A stretch of 63,531 nt of DNA, counting the filler, from Octopus bimaculoides (taxonomy: Eukaryota): the NCBI RefSeq assembly GCF_001194135.2. It is 6 parts of 6 records of this genome, joined end to end, with 100 filler letters (N's around TTAATTAATTAA, not from the genome) between each part and the next. Parts side by side here need not be neighbours in the genome. Positions count along the whole stretch, not along the records: positions 55,302 to 61,921 come from NC_068988.1; 5 more parts are not named here. One strand, given 5' to 3'. Position numbers and translations under genes: made by a program. The notes under the pieces were generated by a model. That model worked only from the letters and a program-made list of their open reading frames with translations. It ran no database searches and was not told where the DNA came from. Below, piece after piece: positions 46,391 to 61,921 of the stretch. Every line of letters starts with the position of its first letter. Positions within the stretch are counted from its first letter, which is position 1.

Positions 46391-46803
46391 AAGGCACCCT
46401 GAATAATGTTTTAGCAAATCTAAAGTGATTTCTTTTGTTCTGTAAACCATTTACCATTTCTGTGATGCTTCCCACATCTTGATGTCCTAAGTACTTGCTT
46501 AAAGGATTTTGTTTTCTGGTTTTCATCCCAGTACATGACAGCATTTTTGCACTGGTTGTTTTGTTTTTGTTTTTGTTTCTGTTGTTGTTGTTTTTCTCTA
46601 CTGGTGGTGCATGGCACAGTGATTAGGATGCTGTACTAACAATCATGCAATCGTGGTTTCAGTTCCCTGACTAGGCAGTGCATTGTCTCCTTGAGCAAAA
46701 CACTTCATTTCACATTGCCTCATTCCACTCAGCTGTGAATGAGTTCCACCAATCAATAGCTGGGGAGTTTATTCTGCATTTTATACAAGCAGCGACTGTT
46801 GTA

Positions 46804-54600: not shown

Positions 54601-55943
54601 AATAGATATAAAATGGTCATTTAGATATGTGTGTGTTGTTTGTACATGACTTGGTAGCTTGTAGCAGGCTTTTGTGAATCATTTTACATTCCTGTATAGT
54701 TATGAGCACACATCATAAGGAAAATGTGTATGAGCAGAGAGAGGAATGGGGGGGAGTAGTGGTTAGAGATATAAAGAGAGACCAGGAAATATATATGAAT
54801 GCAAACAAATGTTGACAGGAAAGTAGAAATGAGAGAAGAGGGAGGAGGGAACCAGGAAATAGAAAGAGATATGACAATATATATGTTATTATTAAATGGA
54901 GAGGGAGACGACGCAAAATACACTTATATACAGATATGTCTTTCTCAATATTTTCTTTTAGTCAAGAATGGGACGTTTTCTGAGTTTTTCTAGCAGAGAG
55001 GTCCAGACATTTTCTAGAGAATTTGATTAGAATTGTGAAGGTGTGGCTGCATGCTTTCATACCAAATGATCTTGAGTTCAGTCACACTATGCAAAACCTT
55101 GGGCAAGTGGTGCATGTCTTCTACTATAGCCCTTGGCCAACCAAGGCCTTGTGAATGGATTTGATGGATGGAAACTGAAAGAAGCCCATCATGTGTATAT
55201 ANNNNNNNNNNNNNNNNNNNNNNNNNNNNNNNNNNNNNNNNNNNNTTAATTAATTAANNNNNNNNNNNNNNNNNNNNNNNNNNNNNNNNNNNNNNNNNNN
55301 NATATACGACAGGCTTCTTTCAGTTTCCGTCTACCAAATACACTCACTAGGATATGGTCGGCCCGAGGCTATAGTAGAAGACACTTGCCCAAGGTGCAAC
55401 GCAGTGGGACTGAACCCGGAATCATGTGCTTGGTAAGCAAGTTACTTATCACACAGCCACATGTAGATTCTTTTATTCTTTTATATTTTGATTTACCTGT
55501 GTTTGAGCTGATAACTTCTTATCTATTTATTTGTAGTTTTTTTTTTATGTCATCCTTTTGTAACATATAAATTGATTAATAATTACATCCATTTATTCTC
55601 CATTATCTTCTTCTTTTCCCCCACAATATTGATAATTTCAATAATCCTGAAATTTCGCATAATATGATACGGATAAAACCAGTGAAAGAATTTTGATGAT
55701 ATAATCGCTAATAACAACATGACTTCATTGAACGAACTATACACACACACACACACGCACACACACACACACAAACACACATATATATATATATATATAT
55801 ACATACGAATATACACATGATTGTGTGTGTGGTGTGTTGGTTGTATGTGTTTTTGTGCGTGCGTGCGTGAGTGCGTGTGTATGTGTTTGTGCGTGTGTGT
55901 GTGTGTGTGTGTGCACGCGTGTTCGTGTGCTTGTATTTGTATA

Positions 55944-56151
55944 TGCGAGGGGGTGATAAAAATATCCCCGCTTTATGTGTATCGCGGAAGGCACAAAATT
56001 CCGAGTTCTTTCACGGGTCTTAGAGACACTGAAGCACCGCTGCAATAGGTGTGTTTGTCGCAGAGTGAGGGAGCTACGTTGATGGAAATCGTTACCGATT
56101 CTATTGTGTTTTCTTTTATCTATGCCAAGAACATTTCCGAACACACTCTTA
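55944..56151 (+). mobile_element. Mariner-derived MITE
   Basis: Degenerate TIRs tgcgagggggtgataaaaat / acatttccgaacacactctta; internal transposase C-terminal remnant (LETLKHRCNRCV). Confidence 0.65.
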
Positions 56152-56634
56152 TATGTATGCATGTATGTGTGTGTGTGTGTGTGTGTGTGTATTAGCTGTA
56201 TATATTTATGTATGTGTAAACTATTCCATACAAGAACGGTATACACACACAAAATTACACATACACACGTACATATATATATATATATGTACACATGTTT
56301 ATATATATATATATATATATANNNNNNNNNNNNNNNNNNNNNNNNNNNNNNNNNNNNNNNNNNNNNNNNNNNNNNNNNNNNNNNNNNNNNNNNNNNNNNN
56401 NNNNNNNNNNNNNNNNNNNNNNNNNNNNNNNNNNNNNNNNNNNNNNNNNNNNNNNNNNNNNNNNNNNNNNNNNNNNNNNNNNNNNNNNNNNNNNNNNNNN
56501 NNNNNNNNNNNNNNNNNNNNNNNNNNNNNNNNTATATATATATATATATACATATATACATATATACATATATACATATGTATGTATACATGTATATATG
56601 TATACTTATAAATATATAAATATATATATATATG

Positions 56635-56681
<47 letters not shown>

Positions 56682-56727
56682 AAATAATAATAATGATAAT
56701 AATAATAATACTAATAATAATAAGGAC

Positions 56728-56760
<33 letters not shown>

Positions 56761-56861
56761 AATACGAAGGAGACAGGCCCAACTCATGGGTGGTAAGATT
56801 AGTAAGAGCCCTGCAGTTTTGATTGACAGACTTACTACGAATGATGGCTCGATACCCATAC

Positions 56862-57090
56862 CGGAAGGCGAGCTGGCAGAATCGATAACGCGTCGCGAGA
56901 AATGCTTTACGTTATTTCGTCTGCCGTTACGTTCTGAGTTCCAATTCCGCCGAGGTCGACTTTGTCTTTCATCCTTTCGGAGTCGATTAAATAATTACCA
57001 GTGACGCACTGGGGTCGATGTAATGGACTTAATCCCTTTGTCTGTCCTTGTTTGTCCCCTCTATGATTAGCCTTTTGTGGACAGTAAAGA
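56862..57090 (+). mobile_element. SINE family C, full-length
   Basis: Consensus match including gaggtcgactttgtctttcatcctttcggagtcgat. Confidence 0.88.
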
Positions 57091-57605
57091 ATGAGATACA
57101 AATACCAGTTGATGGTTAAATATTAAATCACAAAACTCAATGCTGGGTAAATATGTCATATACTACTGTATCAAATAACGGTGTTAATAAGACTGTAACC
57201 AAATGAGAACACCTTTTGCCCGACAGGTGCATTGTCGTTGAGCAGCGCACGCCCTGTCGTCATACGGAAGCTACTTGAACACAAAGCCAGGCGATGATAA
57301 GAATCAGGAAAGTAATATGTAACAGAAAAGAATGGATAACCTGGTACTGTAGGGTGGAAGTAACAAGTCTGCAACGCATGCAAGACTCTAGGAGGTCCCA
57401 CAAAACCTGTGATGAAGAGATATAATGGCAATTAAAACAAAAATTCTAGGTTGGATTTTATCAATACATCGCACGCGCCTTTCCACATAACTTTAACATC
57501 AGAGACATTATTATTGGGATGAGTACAGTATAGTTCGTATAATCCATGATCATCCGCTTGATCAATATCCATAATCTATTTCATCAGGTGATACTACAGA
57601 AATAG

Positions 57606-57966
57606 TGGAGGCGCAATGGCCCAGTGGTTAGAGCATCGCGGTTTCGATTCCCAGATCGGGCGTTGTAAGTGTTTATTGAGTGAAAACACCTAAAGCTCCA
57701 TAAGGCTCCGGCAGGGGATGGTGGCGAACCCTGCTGTACTCTTTCACCACAACTTTCTCTCACTCTTACTTCCTGTTTCTGTTGTGCCTATATTTCAAAG
57801 GGCCAGCCTTGTCACACTGTATCACGCTGAATATCCCCGAGAACTACGTTAAGGGTACACGTGTCTGTGGAGTGCTCAGCCACTTACACGTTAAATTCAC
57901 GAGCAGGCTGTTCCGTTGATCGGATCAATTGGAACCCTCGTCGTCGTAAGCGACGGAGTGCCAACA
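57606..57966 (+). mobile_element. SINE family B with 13-bp TSD, inserted at the left terminus of a MITE
   Basis: TSD ACTACAGAAATAG at 57593-57605 and 57967-57979. Confidence 0.92.
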
Positions 57967-57970
57967 ACTA

Positions 57971-58404
57971 CAGAAATAGAGGTCAATACTTCTCTTATAT
58001 TCTTATTCTATCTAAAGGCTACAGTAGGCGACTGAGGAAATATCTGTTTTAAACGTGGGTATGTTTTCGCTACATGCTGGTGACTTTCCTGCAACACTTT
58101 TGAAATGCCAGCAAAATTTCAGTGCCAGTTAATCACGATTAAATGAAATAGCAAATGAAATAGTTAAGATTAGCAAAGATAGTCAAGCCTCCACTCATAA
58201 TTTTAGCAAACACAATACAATAGATGACAGAATTTCATCTGATAAATTGGCACAGAAAATTCACTGGCATTTCAAAAATGTTGCATGAAAGTTACCAGCA
58301 TGTGGCGAAAAAATATCCTCGTTTAAAACAGATATTTCCTCAGCCGCCTATCGTAGCCGTTAGACGGAATGAGAATATGAGATAGTTATTGACCTCTATT
58401 TCTG
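57971..58404. mobile_element. Foldback MITE, about 434 bp with about 164-bp TIRs
   Basis: 57971-58134 is an imperfect reverse complement of 58241-58404; termini CAGAAATAGAGGTCAAT...ATTGACCTCTATTTCTG. Confidence 0.85.
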
Positions 58405-59186
58405 ATTCCAAGAAAACGAACATTGGACTATCTGCACGCTGTGCCTTGGAAAACAGTTCCAAGAGAAGTAAGCCCTGTTCATTGTGCAACAACATGAGTC
58501 AAGTGAATTCCATGAAGAATCATAACAGAAATGTTAGGATTTATATGGAAGGTGGGACATGTAGTGATTCCCATTTGGTGTACGAGGCATAATGCACGAA
58601 ACACAACTTGATTTATGTTGGTTGTTCAACAGAACAATTAAACAAAATGTTTAATAGGGCACAGATTCGAACAGTAGTTCGACATAACTTGCTGAACATT
58701 TCGTTTCAAGCGGCTGCAATTTTGAAAAAGATCTGAAAGTGCATATTCTCAGAAAATATTCTGAATCTGCTTCACTTTCCCTTCTCAGAATGCATGAGGA
58801 GAAATATGTTTCCGGATTATCAAAAGTGTTTGATTAAATATTCTTCTTGTTCTCTTTTATCTTTTGCTCTTTTTTCTGTTTTTTTTTTCTGTCTTTGTTT
58901 TCTGTCTTCTTTGTTTTCGGTCTTTTTTTTTGTTTTCATTTTTGTCTTTTTGTCTTTCTTTTTTGGTTCACCTGTTATAAAATTGAAACTCTTATAAAAC
59001 ATTGTAACTTAAAAACTGATGATGTCATTCCATCAACGTGTGGACGCTGGTTGCTCTCGTTCATACTTTACATTTAAATTTCTATAATTTTCAATTTTTA
59101 TACTTCTTATTTTCAACTTGACAAATACATTTACTCAACCAATAAAATATCTATAACGATCGAATCGCGCTCTTCGTCTTGACTAT

Positions 59187-59235
59187 TCTTCTTCTTCTTC
59201 TTCTTCTTCTTCTTCTTCTTCTTCTTCTTCTTCTT

Positions 59236-59334
<99 letters not shown>

Positions 59335-59335
59335 G
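59187..59335. repeat. Compound (TTC)n(TTA)n microsatellite
   Basis: Direct reading. Confidence 0.97.
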
Positions 59336-59580
59336 TTCAGCAGTCTTATTTATAATCACGTACTTTCACTGCGCAGCTCCGTGTGCCTTACGTATGTGTT
59401 ATGGTTTATTGTGTTGATGTCATTTTCTCTGTATTGCAAATGTTTCTACATAAGATTATTATTGTTGTTACTGTTCTTGTTTTTAAGTAGAAGAATGACA
59501 AGGCAGAGGTGCAGGAGAGGGGAGTAGGAGGAGGAAAAGGAAGAGGCGGTTGAACCGAAGACGGACAGAAAGAAAGAAAG

Positions 59581-59622
<42 letters not shown>

Positions 59623-60351
59623 GGGGAAAAAGAAGGGAAAAGAAAGGAAAACTTTTAGGAAATGCAGAAACATCAAAAAAGCATTATTAAATAAAAAATG
59701 ACGTTTTCTATGAAGAAGCTGGAGGAGGAGGAGGTGGTGGAGNNNNNNNNNNNNNNNNNNNNNNNNNNNNNNNNNNNNNNNNNNNNNNNNNNNNNNNNNN
59801 NNNNNNNNNNNNNNNNNNNNNNNNNNNNNNNNNNNNNNNNNNNNNNNNNNNNNNNNNNNNNNNNNNNNNNNNNNNNNNNNNNNNNNNNNNNNNNNNNNNN
59901 NNNNNNNNNNNNNNNNNNNNNNNNNNNNNNNNNNNNNNNNNNNNNNNNNNNNNNNNNNNNNNNNNNNNNNNNNNNNNNNNNNNNNNNNNNNNNNNNNNNN
60001 NNNNNNNNNNNNNNNNNNNNNNNNNNNNNNNNNNNNNNNNNNNNNNNNNNNNNNNNNNNNNNNNNNNNNNNNNNNNNNNNNNNNNNNNNNNNNNNNNNNN
60101 NNNNNNNNNNNNNNNNNNNNNNNNNNNNNNNNNNNNNNNNNNNNNNNNNNNNNNNNNNNNNNNNNNNNNNNNNNNNNNNNNNNNNNNNNNNTTTGGGAAT
60201 CAAAAGATGCAAGACGGATATCGGAAGATAAGATATCGCATAAATTTAAAACACCAATGAAATTGGGATAACATATTCGACATCTTTTATGATGTAATAT
60301 GTAAAATAGAATTGAAGAAAAACTGTGATTATATATTATTATATAACTTAC

Positions 60352-61350
60352 CGATGTATTTAAACGAACTCCGATCCACATCATTGTGATCAAAAGCATC
60401 ACGTCCAACAAAGTCATAAATATAAAGGAAGTGTGTCCAGAAAATATATTTTGAAATGAAGAATTTAAAATAATATAAGTAGCAACACAACATCCAGTAA
60501 TACTACTGAGTATGATATATCCCGAAGTCAGCTGAAATGATTCATTCACTAAATTCAGTATTTTACTCAGAGTATCATGTGAGGTACATATTTCTGTAAT
60601 CTCTTCATATTTCTTAAAGAAATACGAAGTATTAGATTGCTTTTCTTTTACGTATCTCTCAGCCTCGCTCGCTACTTTATTAAACTCATAGAGGAGTGCA
60701 GTCCCAGTTGCTGTACTGATATACCAATCAAATAGTATGTATATATGTGATATAAAATCAAATACAATGGAAGTTAATGAAATAATTAAGTCAAGAGGTT
60801 TGCTGGTTTCTAAATTAATTGTTGAGGAATTCCAAACAGAGTTCATGAAAAACGGGAGAACGTAGATCATAATAGTGAGTAAAATAGGCGGCAACAATAT
60901 CACTATAGAAAGTGATATAAAAGAAAATATTAAGTTATTGTTATAGAATTTTTCATCGTCTTTCTCAATTGTAAGTTCGCTGAATGCTTCGAGTATTTCC
61001 TTTTCTTTAGATTTTCGGAAGAATTTGATCAGACAATAGAGTGAAAACAAACACTGAAGAAATAGTACATAAGTATAAAGAATCATTCTACCAGTTTCGC
61101 TATGAATCTCTTCTCTTAGATCGTAAGCATATATAATGGGACTTGTAATCAGATATACCAAATACAGGATATAAAAAGCAGAGATACAGATAGTTTTATA
61201 TTTGAGAGACTTCAGTGATATCTTAGTAATATTAATTTTTCCATAAAATTGTAATATTTTATAGAATCGTGTTTCTTTTAGTTCCATACTTTTTCTAATA
61301 AAATATTTCTCACAAGTTACTTCTATATAAAGAGTTAAACTCTTTGACAT
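60352..61350 (-). CDS. Exon 1 (333 codons, TM1-TM6) of a probable gustatory-receptor-like 7TM ion-channel protein
   Basis: Uninterrupted ORF with an upstream in-frame stop (alternative start Met22 at 61287); six hydrophobic helices; long polar loop between TM4 and TM5 ending HDTLSKILNLVNESF (H..L......N..F); phase-0 donor TCG|gtaagt right after TM6. TM7 exon(s) not found. Confidence 0.72.
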
Positions 61351-61877
61351 AAAACACAGAGGCCTTAGTTTTGTTTAAGATCTCCAGTTCTTCAGTTTTG
61401 CTTCTATGTTAAGTCGAGAGTGTTGCAAAGTTCCGTGTGTTCCGAAAGAAGATATGGGAAAGAAGATATGGGATAAAGCTGTTACATAATGTCTCACGCT
61501 TTATTTGTATGGAGGGATTATTTCAAATCTGTTGGTATGGATTTAAGATATATATTAAATTGAATATTGCTCGCTAAGCTTCTTAAAACAGGTGATTTTT
61601 ATCAGATCAACACTTTTAAAGCGTATAGGAAAACGAATATCAATAGTATGTGTGTGTGTGCGTGTGTGCGTGTGTGTGTGTTTGTGTGTGCTTGTGCATT
61701 TATGCGTGATATTATTCTGCTTCTTGTTTGATTTTCGCAAGTACATTAATTACAATATCGATATTATTTTCTTCGCCATTAGTTTGTATTTTAAGAAGCG
61801 TTGGTTCCAAATGGATGTGCATTTACTATTTCTTTCATCTGCCACATTTAAGAAGATTTATCTTACATATGATGTTT

Positions 61878-61921
<44 letters not shown>

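What the first reader, a model, noticed from the sequence alone, without database searches (positions are those of the whole stretch)
60352..61350. Candidate gustatory-receptor-like (GRL / 7TM ion channel) gene in a probable cephalopod
Seen: an intact 333-codon exon with six TM helices, an N-terminal L..YG motif, a long TM4-TM5 loop ending H..L......N..F, and a phase-0 GTAAGT donor right after TM6. Known: insect GR and metazoan GRL genes typically have one long exon for TM1-6 and short 3' exons after phase-0 introns encoding TM7 with TYhhhhhQF; they are ligand-gated channels of inverted topology, not GPCRs. The best-known octopus chemotactile receptors derive from nicotinic receptors. Inference: this would be a separate and easily missed chemosensory channel lineage. 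The TM7 exon was not found and may lie in the 59743-60191 gap or further away.
Basis: partly seen in the sequence, partly recalled or inferred. Interest (0 to 1): 0.85.

Follow-up and report, generated by a model that had tools for sequence, protein, structure and literature searches.

The report
Octopus gustatory-receptor-like gene, variable first exon
The window holds an intact first exon, coding for six of the seven membrane helices, of an octopus relative of insect taste and smell receptor channels. It is most likely one of many alternative first exons that share a distant pore-forming tail, a known gene family not yet described in cephalopods.

Summary
On the minus strand, 61350-60352 is a stop-free 333-codon frame with six hydrophobic helices, followed directly by a phase-0 GTAAGT donor. 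Chance does not explain it (P about 3e-12).

The gustatory-receptor-like (GRL) reading is supported:
- All detectable relatives are Octopus proteins. Several pass Pfam's own cut-off for 7tm_7, and two also pass 7tm_6.
- AlphaFold models of a full-length paralogue and of the window exon match only insect Orco/OR/GR structures in the PDB.
- The charge distribution predicts a cytoplasmic N-terminus.
- Paralogues end in TM7 with T-Y-x5-Q-T.
- In O. sinensis the 3' end has three short exons after three phase-0 introns, the GR hallmark.

New here: in O. sinensis and O. bimaculoides these loci are arrays of 5 to about 10 intact TM1-6 exons upstream of one shared set of three small exons. This is the Drosophila Gr39a/Gr28b layout on a larger scale. 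In O. vulgaris only the array was seen. It explains why no TM7 exon lies in this 6.6-kb piece.

The true start is probably Met22 (61287). Channel and chemosensory function are inferred, not shown, and expression was not tested. Verdict: a new member of a known kind, of moderate interest.

The parts
60352..61350 (-).
60352..61287 (-). Probable coding part of the exon: Met22 (MELKETRFYKIL...) to ...GVRLNTS, 312 codons. It encodes the cytoplasmic N-terminus and TM1-TM6 of a GR-like subunit.
   Evidence: Aligns from residue 1 of O. sinensis P0003. Stops lie upstream of the equivalent Met in paralogous cassettes.
60346..60351 (-). Phase-0 splice donor GTAAGT
   Evidence: The same position carries GTAAGT or GTGAGT in nearly every full-length O. 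sinensis and O. vulgaris cassette.
61111..61191 (-). TM1 (aa 54-80 in the model)
61018..61095 (-). TM2 (aa 86-111)
60847..60921 (-). TM3 (aa 144-168)
60640..60798 (-). TM4 with its long cytoplasmic helical extension (aa 185-237)
60463..60609 (-). TM5 with its cytoplasmic helical extension (aa 248-296). It contains the family's conserved HD.LS..L.L.N.S stretch and the columns N269, G277, C288 and Y292, which are invariant across all 13 aligned sequences.
60355..60456 (-). TM6 (aa 299-332), with the invariant G327
60192..60345 (-). Start of intron 1. It is 80-85% identical to the intron starts of the O. vulgaris cassettes, so it belongs to the duplicated cassette unit.
61351..61638 (-). Upstream flank that is duplicated together with the exon in O. 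vulgaris cassettes. It is a candidate cassette-specific promoter or 5' UTR (inferred).
   Evidence: alignments extend to 61586-61638
59743..60191 (.). Assembly gap (449 N) inside intron 1

Best explanation
Identity. The feature is the long 5' coding exon of a gustatory-receptor-like (GRL, 7TM ion channel superfamily) gene of an octopod. It encodes a cytoplasmic N-terminus and TM1-TM6. That part corresponds to the portion of insect OR/GR structures that holds the ligand pocket and much of the cytoplasmic anchor.

Gene layout. The exon ends in a phase-0 donor. By homology with the O. sinensis and O. bimaculoides loci, it is spliced to three small downstream exons. These are shared by a tandem array of sister first exons, each probably with its own promoter. 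The shared exons encode the TM6-TM7 loop and TM7, which carries T-Y-x5-Q-T. Each transcript would therefore combine one variable ligand-binding module with one constant pore and assembly module.

Function. The product most likely assembles into a tetrameric ligand-gated cation channel, like insect ORs and GRs, and serves as a chemoreceptor.

Shown: the intact ORF and donor; family membership by HMM, fold, topology, motif and intron pattern in paralogues; the cassette arrays with shared 3' exons in O. sinensis and O. bimaculoides, and a cassette array without its 3' exons in the O. vulgaris stretch read.

Inferred: that this particular exon sits in such an array and is expressed; tetrameric channel function; a chemosensory role.
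For: - ORF and donor.
- Homologues: O. sinensis P0003 at E 1.4e-60 and 38% identity. A profile that includes the window exon finds only 18 proteins at E <= 0.001 in 1.84 billion representatives; those that carry a source name are Octopus proteins.
- Pfam 7tm_7 and 7tm_6 above the gathering score in paralogues. BLASTP of the window exon against P0026, which passes both models, gives E 2e-8. The in-silico chimera scores 31.1 bits on 7tm_7.
- Structure: the P0003 model has pLDDT 71 and pTM 0.71, and Foldseek ranks 1-21 are all Orco/OR/GR structures. The exon model has pLDDT 75 and pTM 0.76, with OR/Orco/GR on top at TMq 0.49-0.58.
- The positive-inside rule gives an N-in topology.
- O. sinensis locus L001: five intact cassettes plus one fragment, then exons of 69, 90 and 54 nt. 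All three introns are phase 0 with GT..AG ends, and the last exon reads MIGSFITYILVVIQTKPL*.
- RefSeq isoforms X1, X2 and X3 of LOC118764608 join three different cassettes to the same tail.
- O. bimaculoides L003: about 10 stop-free cassettes, then three shared exons. O. vulgaris L002: nine cassettes at 62-69% aa identity to the window exon.
[quoted passage not shown] Drosophila Gr39a has four large alternative exons plus three small shared exons (PMC2204066).
Against: - The window exon alone has no Pfam hit at E <= 10. The profile finds nothing among PDB sequences. Full-length P0003 itself misses 7tm_7.
- No TM7 exon and no sister cassette lie in the 6.6-kb piece, so the array context of this exon rests on homology.
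- The motif's last position is T rather than F.
- TM7 in the model has low confidence (pLDDT 36-52).
- dN/dS against the nearest O. vulgaris cassettes is 0.80-0.85, which fits weak constraint as well as rapid diversification.
- There are no expression data and no functional data for any cephalopod GRL. GRLs outside arthropods have non-chemosensory roles in the few studied cases, for example body patterning in Nematostella (PMC7746228; PMC5850775).
Confidence: 0.85

Rival explanations
1. Dead or silent cassette. The exon is a recent duplicate in a birth-and-death array that is no longer transcribed or spliced, so it is a pseudo-exon that has not yet picked up a stop.
For: Cassette arrays hold many damaged copies: 4 of 9 in O. 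vulgaris L002, plus fragments in L001 and L003. dN/dS is 0.80-0.85 against the nearest copies. No expression evidence exists. The source's own protein is absent from the 5.8-billion-protein collection.
Against: - The 312-333 codon frame is intact at 30% G+C.
- The GTAAGT donor is intact.
- Every family-invariant residue is present.
- At dS of about 0.24 from the nearest copy, a neutrally drifting exon would be expected to carry several stops or frameshifts. By my rough estimate, the chance of staying open is about 0.01.
- dN/dS falls to 0.4-0.6 against older cassettes.
Confidence: 0.12
2. Stand-alone GRL gene. Its private TM7 exons would be hidden in the assembly gaps (59743-60191 or 56322-56532) rather than shared with other cassettes.
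For: A 449-N gap starts 160 bp after the donor. Gap sizes in assemblies are often nominal.
Against: In O. sinensis the nearest cassette is 3.4 kb from the first shared exon, and the three small exons span 2.9 kb. None of the three is detectable in the 4.4 kb of readable sequence downstream. All three would therefore have to fall inside gaps. The closest relatives of this exon in O. vulgaris sit in a dense cassette array with no 3' exons between them.
Confidence: 0.08
3. Not a GR-type channel: a GPCR, a transporter or another multi-pass membrane protein that only looks similar.
For: The exon alone has no Pfam hit, and identity to insect receptors is 10-14%.
Against: Paralogues pass the curated 7tm_7 and 7tm_6 cut-offs. 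Only OR/GR/Orco structures match the models, while ABC transporters and one GPCR score TM 0.14-0.25. The N-in topology is opposite to that of GPCRs. The intron phases and TM7 motif are GR-specific.
Confidence: 0.01

Closest known systems
Drosophila Gr39a, Gr28b and Gr23a complex loci (insect gustatory receptors with alternative large 5' exons)
   Same: Several large alternative exons that each encode TM1-TM6 are spliced to three small shared exons that encode TM7 (PMC2204066). The octopus loci show the same layout, with phase-0 introns. Exon gain, loss and pseudogenisation occur within the array.
   Different: The octopus arrays are larger: 5 intact cassettes in L001, 9 copies in L002 and about 10 stop-free cassettes in L003, against 2-5 in the fly. 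The proteins share only about 10-14% identity with insect receptors. Whether the layout is ancestral or convergent is unknown.
Metazoan gustatory-receptor-like (GRL) proteins (Robertson 2015; Saina 2015; Eyun 2017), including molluscan GRLs such as those of Aplysia
   Same: Seven TM domains, an intracellular N-terminus, a TM7 motif and conserved 3' introns (PMC7746228). Presence in Mollusca is already reported.
   Different: No relative outside Octopus was detectable by sequence in three searches and one exhaustive HMM scan, so this is a fast-evolving lineage-specific clade. No paper in the searchable library describes cephalopod GRLs.
Insect Orco, OR and GR channels with solved structures (6C70, 7LIC, 8V3D, 8VC1, 8JM9, 8ZE0 and others)
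   Same: The predicted fold matches at TM-score 0.48-0.66 over the full length. TM4 and TM5 have long cytoplasmic extensions, and TM7 lies at the C-terminus.
   Different: Tetramer formation, the pore and ligand gating were not tested. The last motif residue is T, not F. The TM7 part of the model has low confidence.
Octopus chemotactile receptors (CRs, derived from nicotinic acetylcholine receptors)
   Same: Both are candidate ionotropic chemoreceptor families that have expanded in octopus (PMC11526382).
   Different: They are unrelated in fold and family: pentameric Cys-loop receptors against 7TM GR-type channels. CRs have functional and structural proof, whereas these genes have none.
Variable-exon and constant-exon clusters such as clustered protocadherins and UGT1A (from my own knowledge, not tested here)
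   Same: A tandem array of large variable first exons, each presumably with its own promoter, is spliced to a few shared constant exons.
   Different: The protein family is different, and promoter choice in the octopus loci has not been shown.

Membership tests
GR/GRL (insect chemoreceptor superfamily, 7TMIC; Pfam 7tm_7 PF08395) | Match to the family HMM above the curated cut-off (26.6 bits) | tested here: met
   Paralogues score 27.4-35.1 bits: P0023 33.8, P0026 35.1, P0022 30.3, P0027 30.5 and P0012 27.4. P0026 (36.5) and P0027 (28.3) also pass 7tm_6. The window exon alone gives no hit. The exon plus borrowed O. sinensis 3' exons scores 31.1 bits over profile positions 5-367 of 370. The link to the window is by homology: E 1.4e-60 to P0003 and E 2e-8 to P0026.
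GR/GRL | Seven transmembrane helices | tested here: inconclusive
   The window encodes six. The seventh is present in full-length paralogues but was not found in the piece.
GR/GRL | Intracellular N-terminus (topology inverted relative to GPCRs) | tested here: met
   Positive-inside rule: K+R counts of 12, 6 and 7 in the N-terminus, TM2-3 loop and TM4-5 loop, against 2, 1 and 0 in the alternate loops. This is a prediction only.
GR/GRL | TM7 motif TYhhhhhQF | tested here: inconclusive
   Paralogues carry TYILVVIQT or TYSIVAYQT, which keeps T, Y and Q but not F. Variants of this motif are accepted in the family (PMC9998090; PMC7746228). The window's own TM7 exon is not in the piece.
GR/GRL | [quoted passage not shown] | tested here: met
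   O. sinensis has exons of 954, 69, 90 and 54 nt, with all introns phase 0 and GT..AG ends. The window has the first of these donors at the homologous codon. The criterion comes from PMC9998090.
GR/GRL | OR/GR/Orco three-dimensional fold | tested here: met
   Foldseek against the PDB returns only Orco, OR and GR structures at prob >= 0.99. These are predicted models of moderate confidence (pLDDT 71 and 75).
GR/GRL | Forms a tetrameric ligand-gated cation channel | not testable with these tools
   Needs expression, electrophysiology and structure determination.
Alternative-first-exon GR locus (Gr39a/Gr28b type) | Several large TM1-6 exons upstream of one shared set of small 3' exons, joined in different transcripts | tested here: inconclusive
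   Met in O. sinensis L001 and O. bimaculoides L003, with RefSeq isoforms X1, X2 and X3 joining different cassettes to one tail. For the window's own locus, only one cassette and no 3' exon are visible in the 6.6 kb.
GPCR (rhodopsin-like or other) | GPCR fold and an extracellular N-terminus | tested here: not met
   There is no GPCR Pfam hit. The only GPCR in the Foldseek list has TM 0.16. The predicted topology is N-in.

The most novel reading that the evidence does not exclude
Octopus genomes may carry a second ionotropic chemoreceptor repertoire, so far undescribed, beside the nicotinic-receptor-derived chemotactile receptors. It would consist of clustered GR-like loci built as large variable-exon arrays: up to about 10 alternative TM1-6 ligand-binding modules per constant TM7 pore module, with neighbouring loci lying tail to tail. 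Promoter choice would then give dozens of channel subunits from a few genes, as in clustered protocadherins, and these would be expressed in suckers or the olfactory organ.
Probability: 0.3. Interest if true: 0.7.

Novelty: new member of a known kind. Interest (0 to 1): 0.45.

Why it matters
Work on octopus chemosensation has centred on nicotinic-receptor-derived chemotactile receptors and on GPCR expansions. A clade of GR-type channel genes that is expanding, evolving fast and diversifying by cassette would add a third candidate receptor class for suckers or the olfactory organ.

It would also place the Gr39a-style design, variable ligand module plus constant pore module, outside arthropods. 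That bears on whether the layout and the three phase-0 introns are ancestral to bilaterian GRLs.

On the practical side, automated annotation handles these loci badly. This exon's product is absent from the protein collection, and the O. vulgaris model P0004 is a scrambled chimera. Repertoire counts for cephalopods are therefore probably too low.

Tried and rejected
- Pfam on the exon alone, and on P0001, P0002 and P0003: no family hit.
- Profile search of PDB sequences: nothing at E <= 10.
- Motif scan [TS]Y.{5}Q in all six frames of 55302-60351: one hit, on the wrong strand and broken by stops.
- tblastn of the P0003 C-terminus against the piece at E <= 50: no credible hit on the minus strand. 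The TM7 exon is therefore not in the readable part of the piece.
- tblastn of the shared 3' exons against O. vulgaris L002: not found within 68 kb, so they lie beyond the stretch fetched.
- Searches for relatives outside Octopus, three word-seeded searches and one exhaustive HMM scan: none found. A distant molluscan GRL could still be beyond the reach of sequence search.
- Look-up of O. bimaculoides P0020, meant to test whether the window comes from that species: not on record. The source species stays undetermined. The best nucleotide identity of the exon is 80-85%, to O. vulgaris paralogues.
- ARAGORN on the piece: no tRNA.
- Pfam on the decayed ORF at about 58224-58700: no hit. My impression that it is a remnant of a GIY-YIG-type transposon is unconfirmed.
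- Literature: no paper on cephalopod GRLs in the library. Robertson 2015 itself was not readable here and is cited only through PMC7746228 and PMC5850775.

Full report
**1. The observation**

On the minus strand an ORF runs from the ATG at 61350 to 60352, 333 codons without a stop. The next six bases, 60351-60346, are GTAAGT, so a splice donor there would be phase 0.

The exon is only about 30% G+C. At its base composition a stop is expected every 13 codons, and the chance of 333 open codons is 2.8e-12. The longest stop-free run in the contiguous 1.7-kb stretch is 394 aa, against a maximum of 162 in 1000 Markov simulations.

Hydropathy gives six hydrophobic segments and a 70-residue TM4-TM5 loop. 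The second motif exists but has seven residues, not six, between L and N (aa 258-272).

The piece has two assembly gaps, at 56322-56532 and 59743-60191.

**2. The likely start codon**

The first 21 codons are probably not coding. Full-length O. sinensis relatives begin at the equivalent of Met22. In those cassettes a stop lies a few codons upstream of that Met, and the closest O. vulgaris cassettes carry stops inside the extension. The AlphaFold model has pLDDT below 50 for residues 1-21. The likely coding exon is therefore 61287-60352, 312 codons.

**3. Relatives**

The exon's translation finds only four proteins in the 5.8-billion-protein collection. The best named one is O. sinensis LOC118764608 isoform X1 (P0003, 389 aa, 38% identity, E 1.4e-60).

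An exhaustive HMMER scan of 1.84 billion representatives, with a profile that includes the exon, finds 18 proteins at E <= 0.001. Two more profile searches add only Octopus entries: O. sinensis LOC118764605, LOC118764607 and LOC118764608, O. bimaculoides LOC106880719 and LOC106880487, one O. vulgaris model, and unnamed contigs from sequencing runs.

The window's own product is not in the collection. The family is thus a small, fast-evolving clade seen so far only in octopuses. The source of the window is an octopod whose species I could not determine. The exon and its flanks are 80-85% identical to O. vulgaris paralogues, not to an orthologue.

**4. Is it a GR-like protein?**

Five independent tests agree.

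- HMM. The exon alone and P0003 give no Pfam hit. Paralogues do pass the curated 7tm_7 cut-off of 26.6 bits: P0023 33.8, P0026 35.1, P0022 30.3, P0027 30.5 and P0012 27.4. P0026 (36.5 bits) and P0027 (28.3 bits) also pass 7tm_6. The window exon aligns directly to P0026 at E 2e-8. A hypothetical product, the exon joined to the O. sinensis shared 3' exons, scores 31.1 bits on 7tm_7 across profile positions 5-367 of 370.
- Fold. An AlphaFold model of P0003 (pLDDT 71, pTM 0.71) matches, at ranks 1-21 in the PDB, only insect Orco, OR and GR cryo-EM structures. These have prob 1.00 and TM 0.48-0.66. Rank 22 falls to prob 0.16 and TM 0.17. The model of the window exon alone (pLDDT 75, pTM 0.76) puts the same structures on top at TMq 0.49-0.58, while everything else stays near TM 0.2.
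- Topology. Lys plus Arg counts are 12, 6 and 7 in the N-terminus, the TM2-3 loop and the TM4-5 loop, against 2, 1 and 0 in the alternate loops. This predicts a cytoplasmic N-terminus, as in ORs and GRs and opposite to GPCRs.
- TM7 motif. Full-length paralogues end in GSFITYILVVIQTKPL or GSIITYSIVAYQTRS, that is T-Y-x5-Q-T. This is the canonical TYhhhhhQF with its last residue changed (motif as given in PMC9998090).
- Gene structure. In O. sinensis the P0003 gene has a 954-nt first exon ending ...LNRS|gtaagt, at exactly the codon where the window exon ends. Exons of 69, 90 and 54 nt follow. All three introns are phase 0 with GT..AG ends, and the last exon starts just before TM7.

[quoted passage not shown] Together with the TM7 motif, they are the criteria used to accept animal GRLs (PMC7746228).

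**5. Why the TM7 exon is missing: cassette arrays**

O. sinensis. The 59.6-kb locus L001 holds five intact TM1-6 exons and one fragment in tandem, at 1457, 6109 (fragment), 10001, 16398, 27570 and 42321. A single set of the three small exons follows at 46673, 47649 and 49533. RefSeq isoforms X1, X2 and X3 of LOC118764608 join three different cassettes to that same tail.

O. bimaculoides. Locus L003 holds about ten stop-free cassettes of the more distant P0023/P0026 type, plus fragments. Its shared exons lie at 67322, 70311 and 73706. The 3' exons of a neighbouring locus sit on the opposite strand.

O. vulgaris. Locus L002 has nine cassettes closest to the window exon (62-69% aa identity). Five are intact and four carry stops or truncations. 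There are no 3' exons between them.

The duplicated unit includes about 160 bp of intron and about 250 bp of upstream flank. This fits a promoter for each cassette, which is an inference.

In the window, neither a motif scan nor tblastn finds any of the three small exons or a second cassette in the readable 4.4 kb downstream. The most economical reading is that the window exon is one variable cassette whose constant exons lie beyond the piece. A private set hidden in the gaps cannot be excluded, but it would need all three exons, which span 2.9 kb in O. sinensis, to fall inside N runs.

**6. Constraint**

By the Nei-Gojobori method, dN/dS is 0.80-0.85 against the nearest O. vulgaris cassettes (dS 0.23-0.25) and 0.4-0.6 against older cassettes.

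This is weak constraint, as is common in young chemoreceptor duplicates, and it also fits decay. However, the frame and the donor are intact and all family-invariant residues are present. At that divergence a neutral copy should have collected several stops, by my rough estimate. I therefore rate 'dead cassette' at about 0.12.

**7. Mechanism**

Shown:
- An intact exon for the N-terminus and TM1-6 of a GR-fold protein, ending in a phase-0 donor.
- Paralogous loci that combine variable TM1-6 exons with constant TM7 exons.

Inferred from the family:
- In solved insect OR and GR structures the ligand pocket lies within the extracellular half of the helix bundle of each subunit.
- TM7 lines the central pore of a tetramer, and the cytoplasmic parts of TM4-7 form the anchor domain.
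- The octopus layout would therefore generate subunits that differ in ligand recognition but share the pore helix and part of the assembly interface.

A chemosensory role is plausible but unproven. The few GRLs studied outside arthropods include a developmental one in Nematostella (PMC7746228; PMC5850775).

**8. Novelty**

GRLs are already known across protostomes, including Mollusca (PMC7746228; PMC5850775). Alternative-first-exon GR loci are known in insects. Paralogues of this exon exist in RefSeq as 'uncharacterized protein' with 7tm_7 hits on record.

I found no paper that describes GRLs in any cephalopod. Reviews of octopus chemosensation mention only CRs, IRs and GPCRs.

This is a new member of a known kind. 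The added points of some interest are the lineage-specific octopus clade and the cassette arrays, which are larger than in flies and have not been reported outside arthropods as far as I could find.

**9. Caveats**

- The structure models have moderate confidence, and TM7 is poorly predicted.
- The RefSeq isoforms are computational models whose transcript support I could not see.
- 'Only in Octopus' depends on the reach of the sequence searches.
- The species of the window is unknown.
- Nothing here tests expression or function.

Noticed in passing
window 57971-58135 and 58240-58404: An inverted repeat of 165 nt, 85% complementary, with 104 nt between the arms. Both arms and the sequence after them carry decayed ORFs such as ...KYPRLKQIFPQPPIVAVRRNENMR..C..C..., interrupted by stops. 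It looks like two inverted remnants of a transposable element. There is no Pfam hit, so its type is unconfirmed.
   Followed up: partly
window 57626-57968; L003 61997-62341: A 345-bp stretch is 94.8% identical to a site inside the O. bimaculoides GRL locus. This is far more similar than the exon is to any paralogue, so it is probably a young interspersed repeat. ARAGORN finds no tRNA in it.
   Followed up: partly
window 55741-56760, 58870-59650, 61649-61708, 61883-61921: Dense microsatellites lie around the exon: (AC)n, (TG)n and (AT)n; (ATA)29; (GAT)11; perfect (TTC)27 directly followed by (TTA)24 at 59186-59334; and (AGAA)n. Several abut the two N gaps, which probably explains the assembly breaks.
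   Followed up: no
P0004 / L002 (O. vulgaris OX597821.1:107184675-107253054): The only O. vulgaris protein model for this locus is a chimera. It has a 150-aa N-terminal part unrelated to the family, then the middle of one cassette, then the N-terminus of another cassette out of order, then an out-of-frame stretch. Automated annotation fails on these arrays.
   Followed up: partly
L003 81320-81782 (minus strand) and L001 59371-59541: In O. bimaculoides the 3' exons of a second GRL locus, of the P0003/P0020 type, lie tail to tail about 8 kb behind the shared exons of the P0023-type locus. In O. sinensis a further cassette starts about 10 kb after the shared exons. The GRL loci therefore form a chromosomal cluster.
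   Followed up: partly
P0012 versus P0022 (O. sinensis LOC118764607 isoforms X3 and X4): The two models differ by 14 residues (VHSITRSIHYMQFQ) at the start of the first shared exon. This suggests an alternative in-frame acceptor 42 nt inside that exon. P0020 and P0021 also lack the stretch. It was not checked against genomic sequence or reads.
   Followed up: no
L004-L008 (Logan contigs from runs SRR11869384, -85, -90, -91, -94): P0001, at 53% identity to the window exon, occurs on 1.2-1.4-kb contigs from five sequencing runs of one study, and its ORF reads through the GTAAGT donor. The species and library type are unknown. If these are RNA libraries, they would be unspliced transcripts of a cassette.
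   Followed up: no
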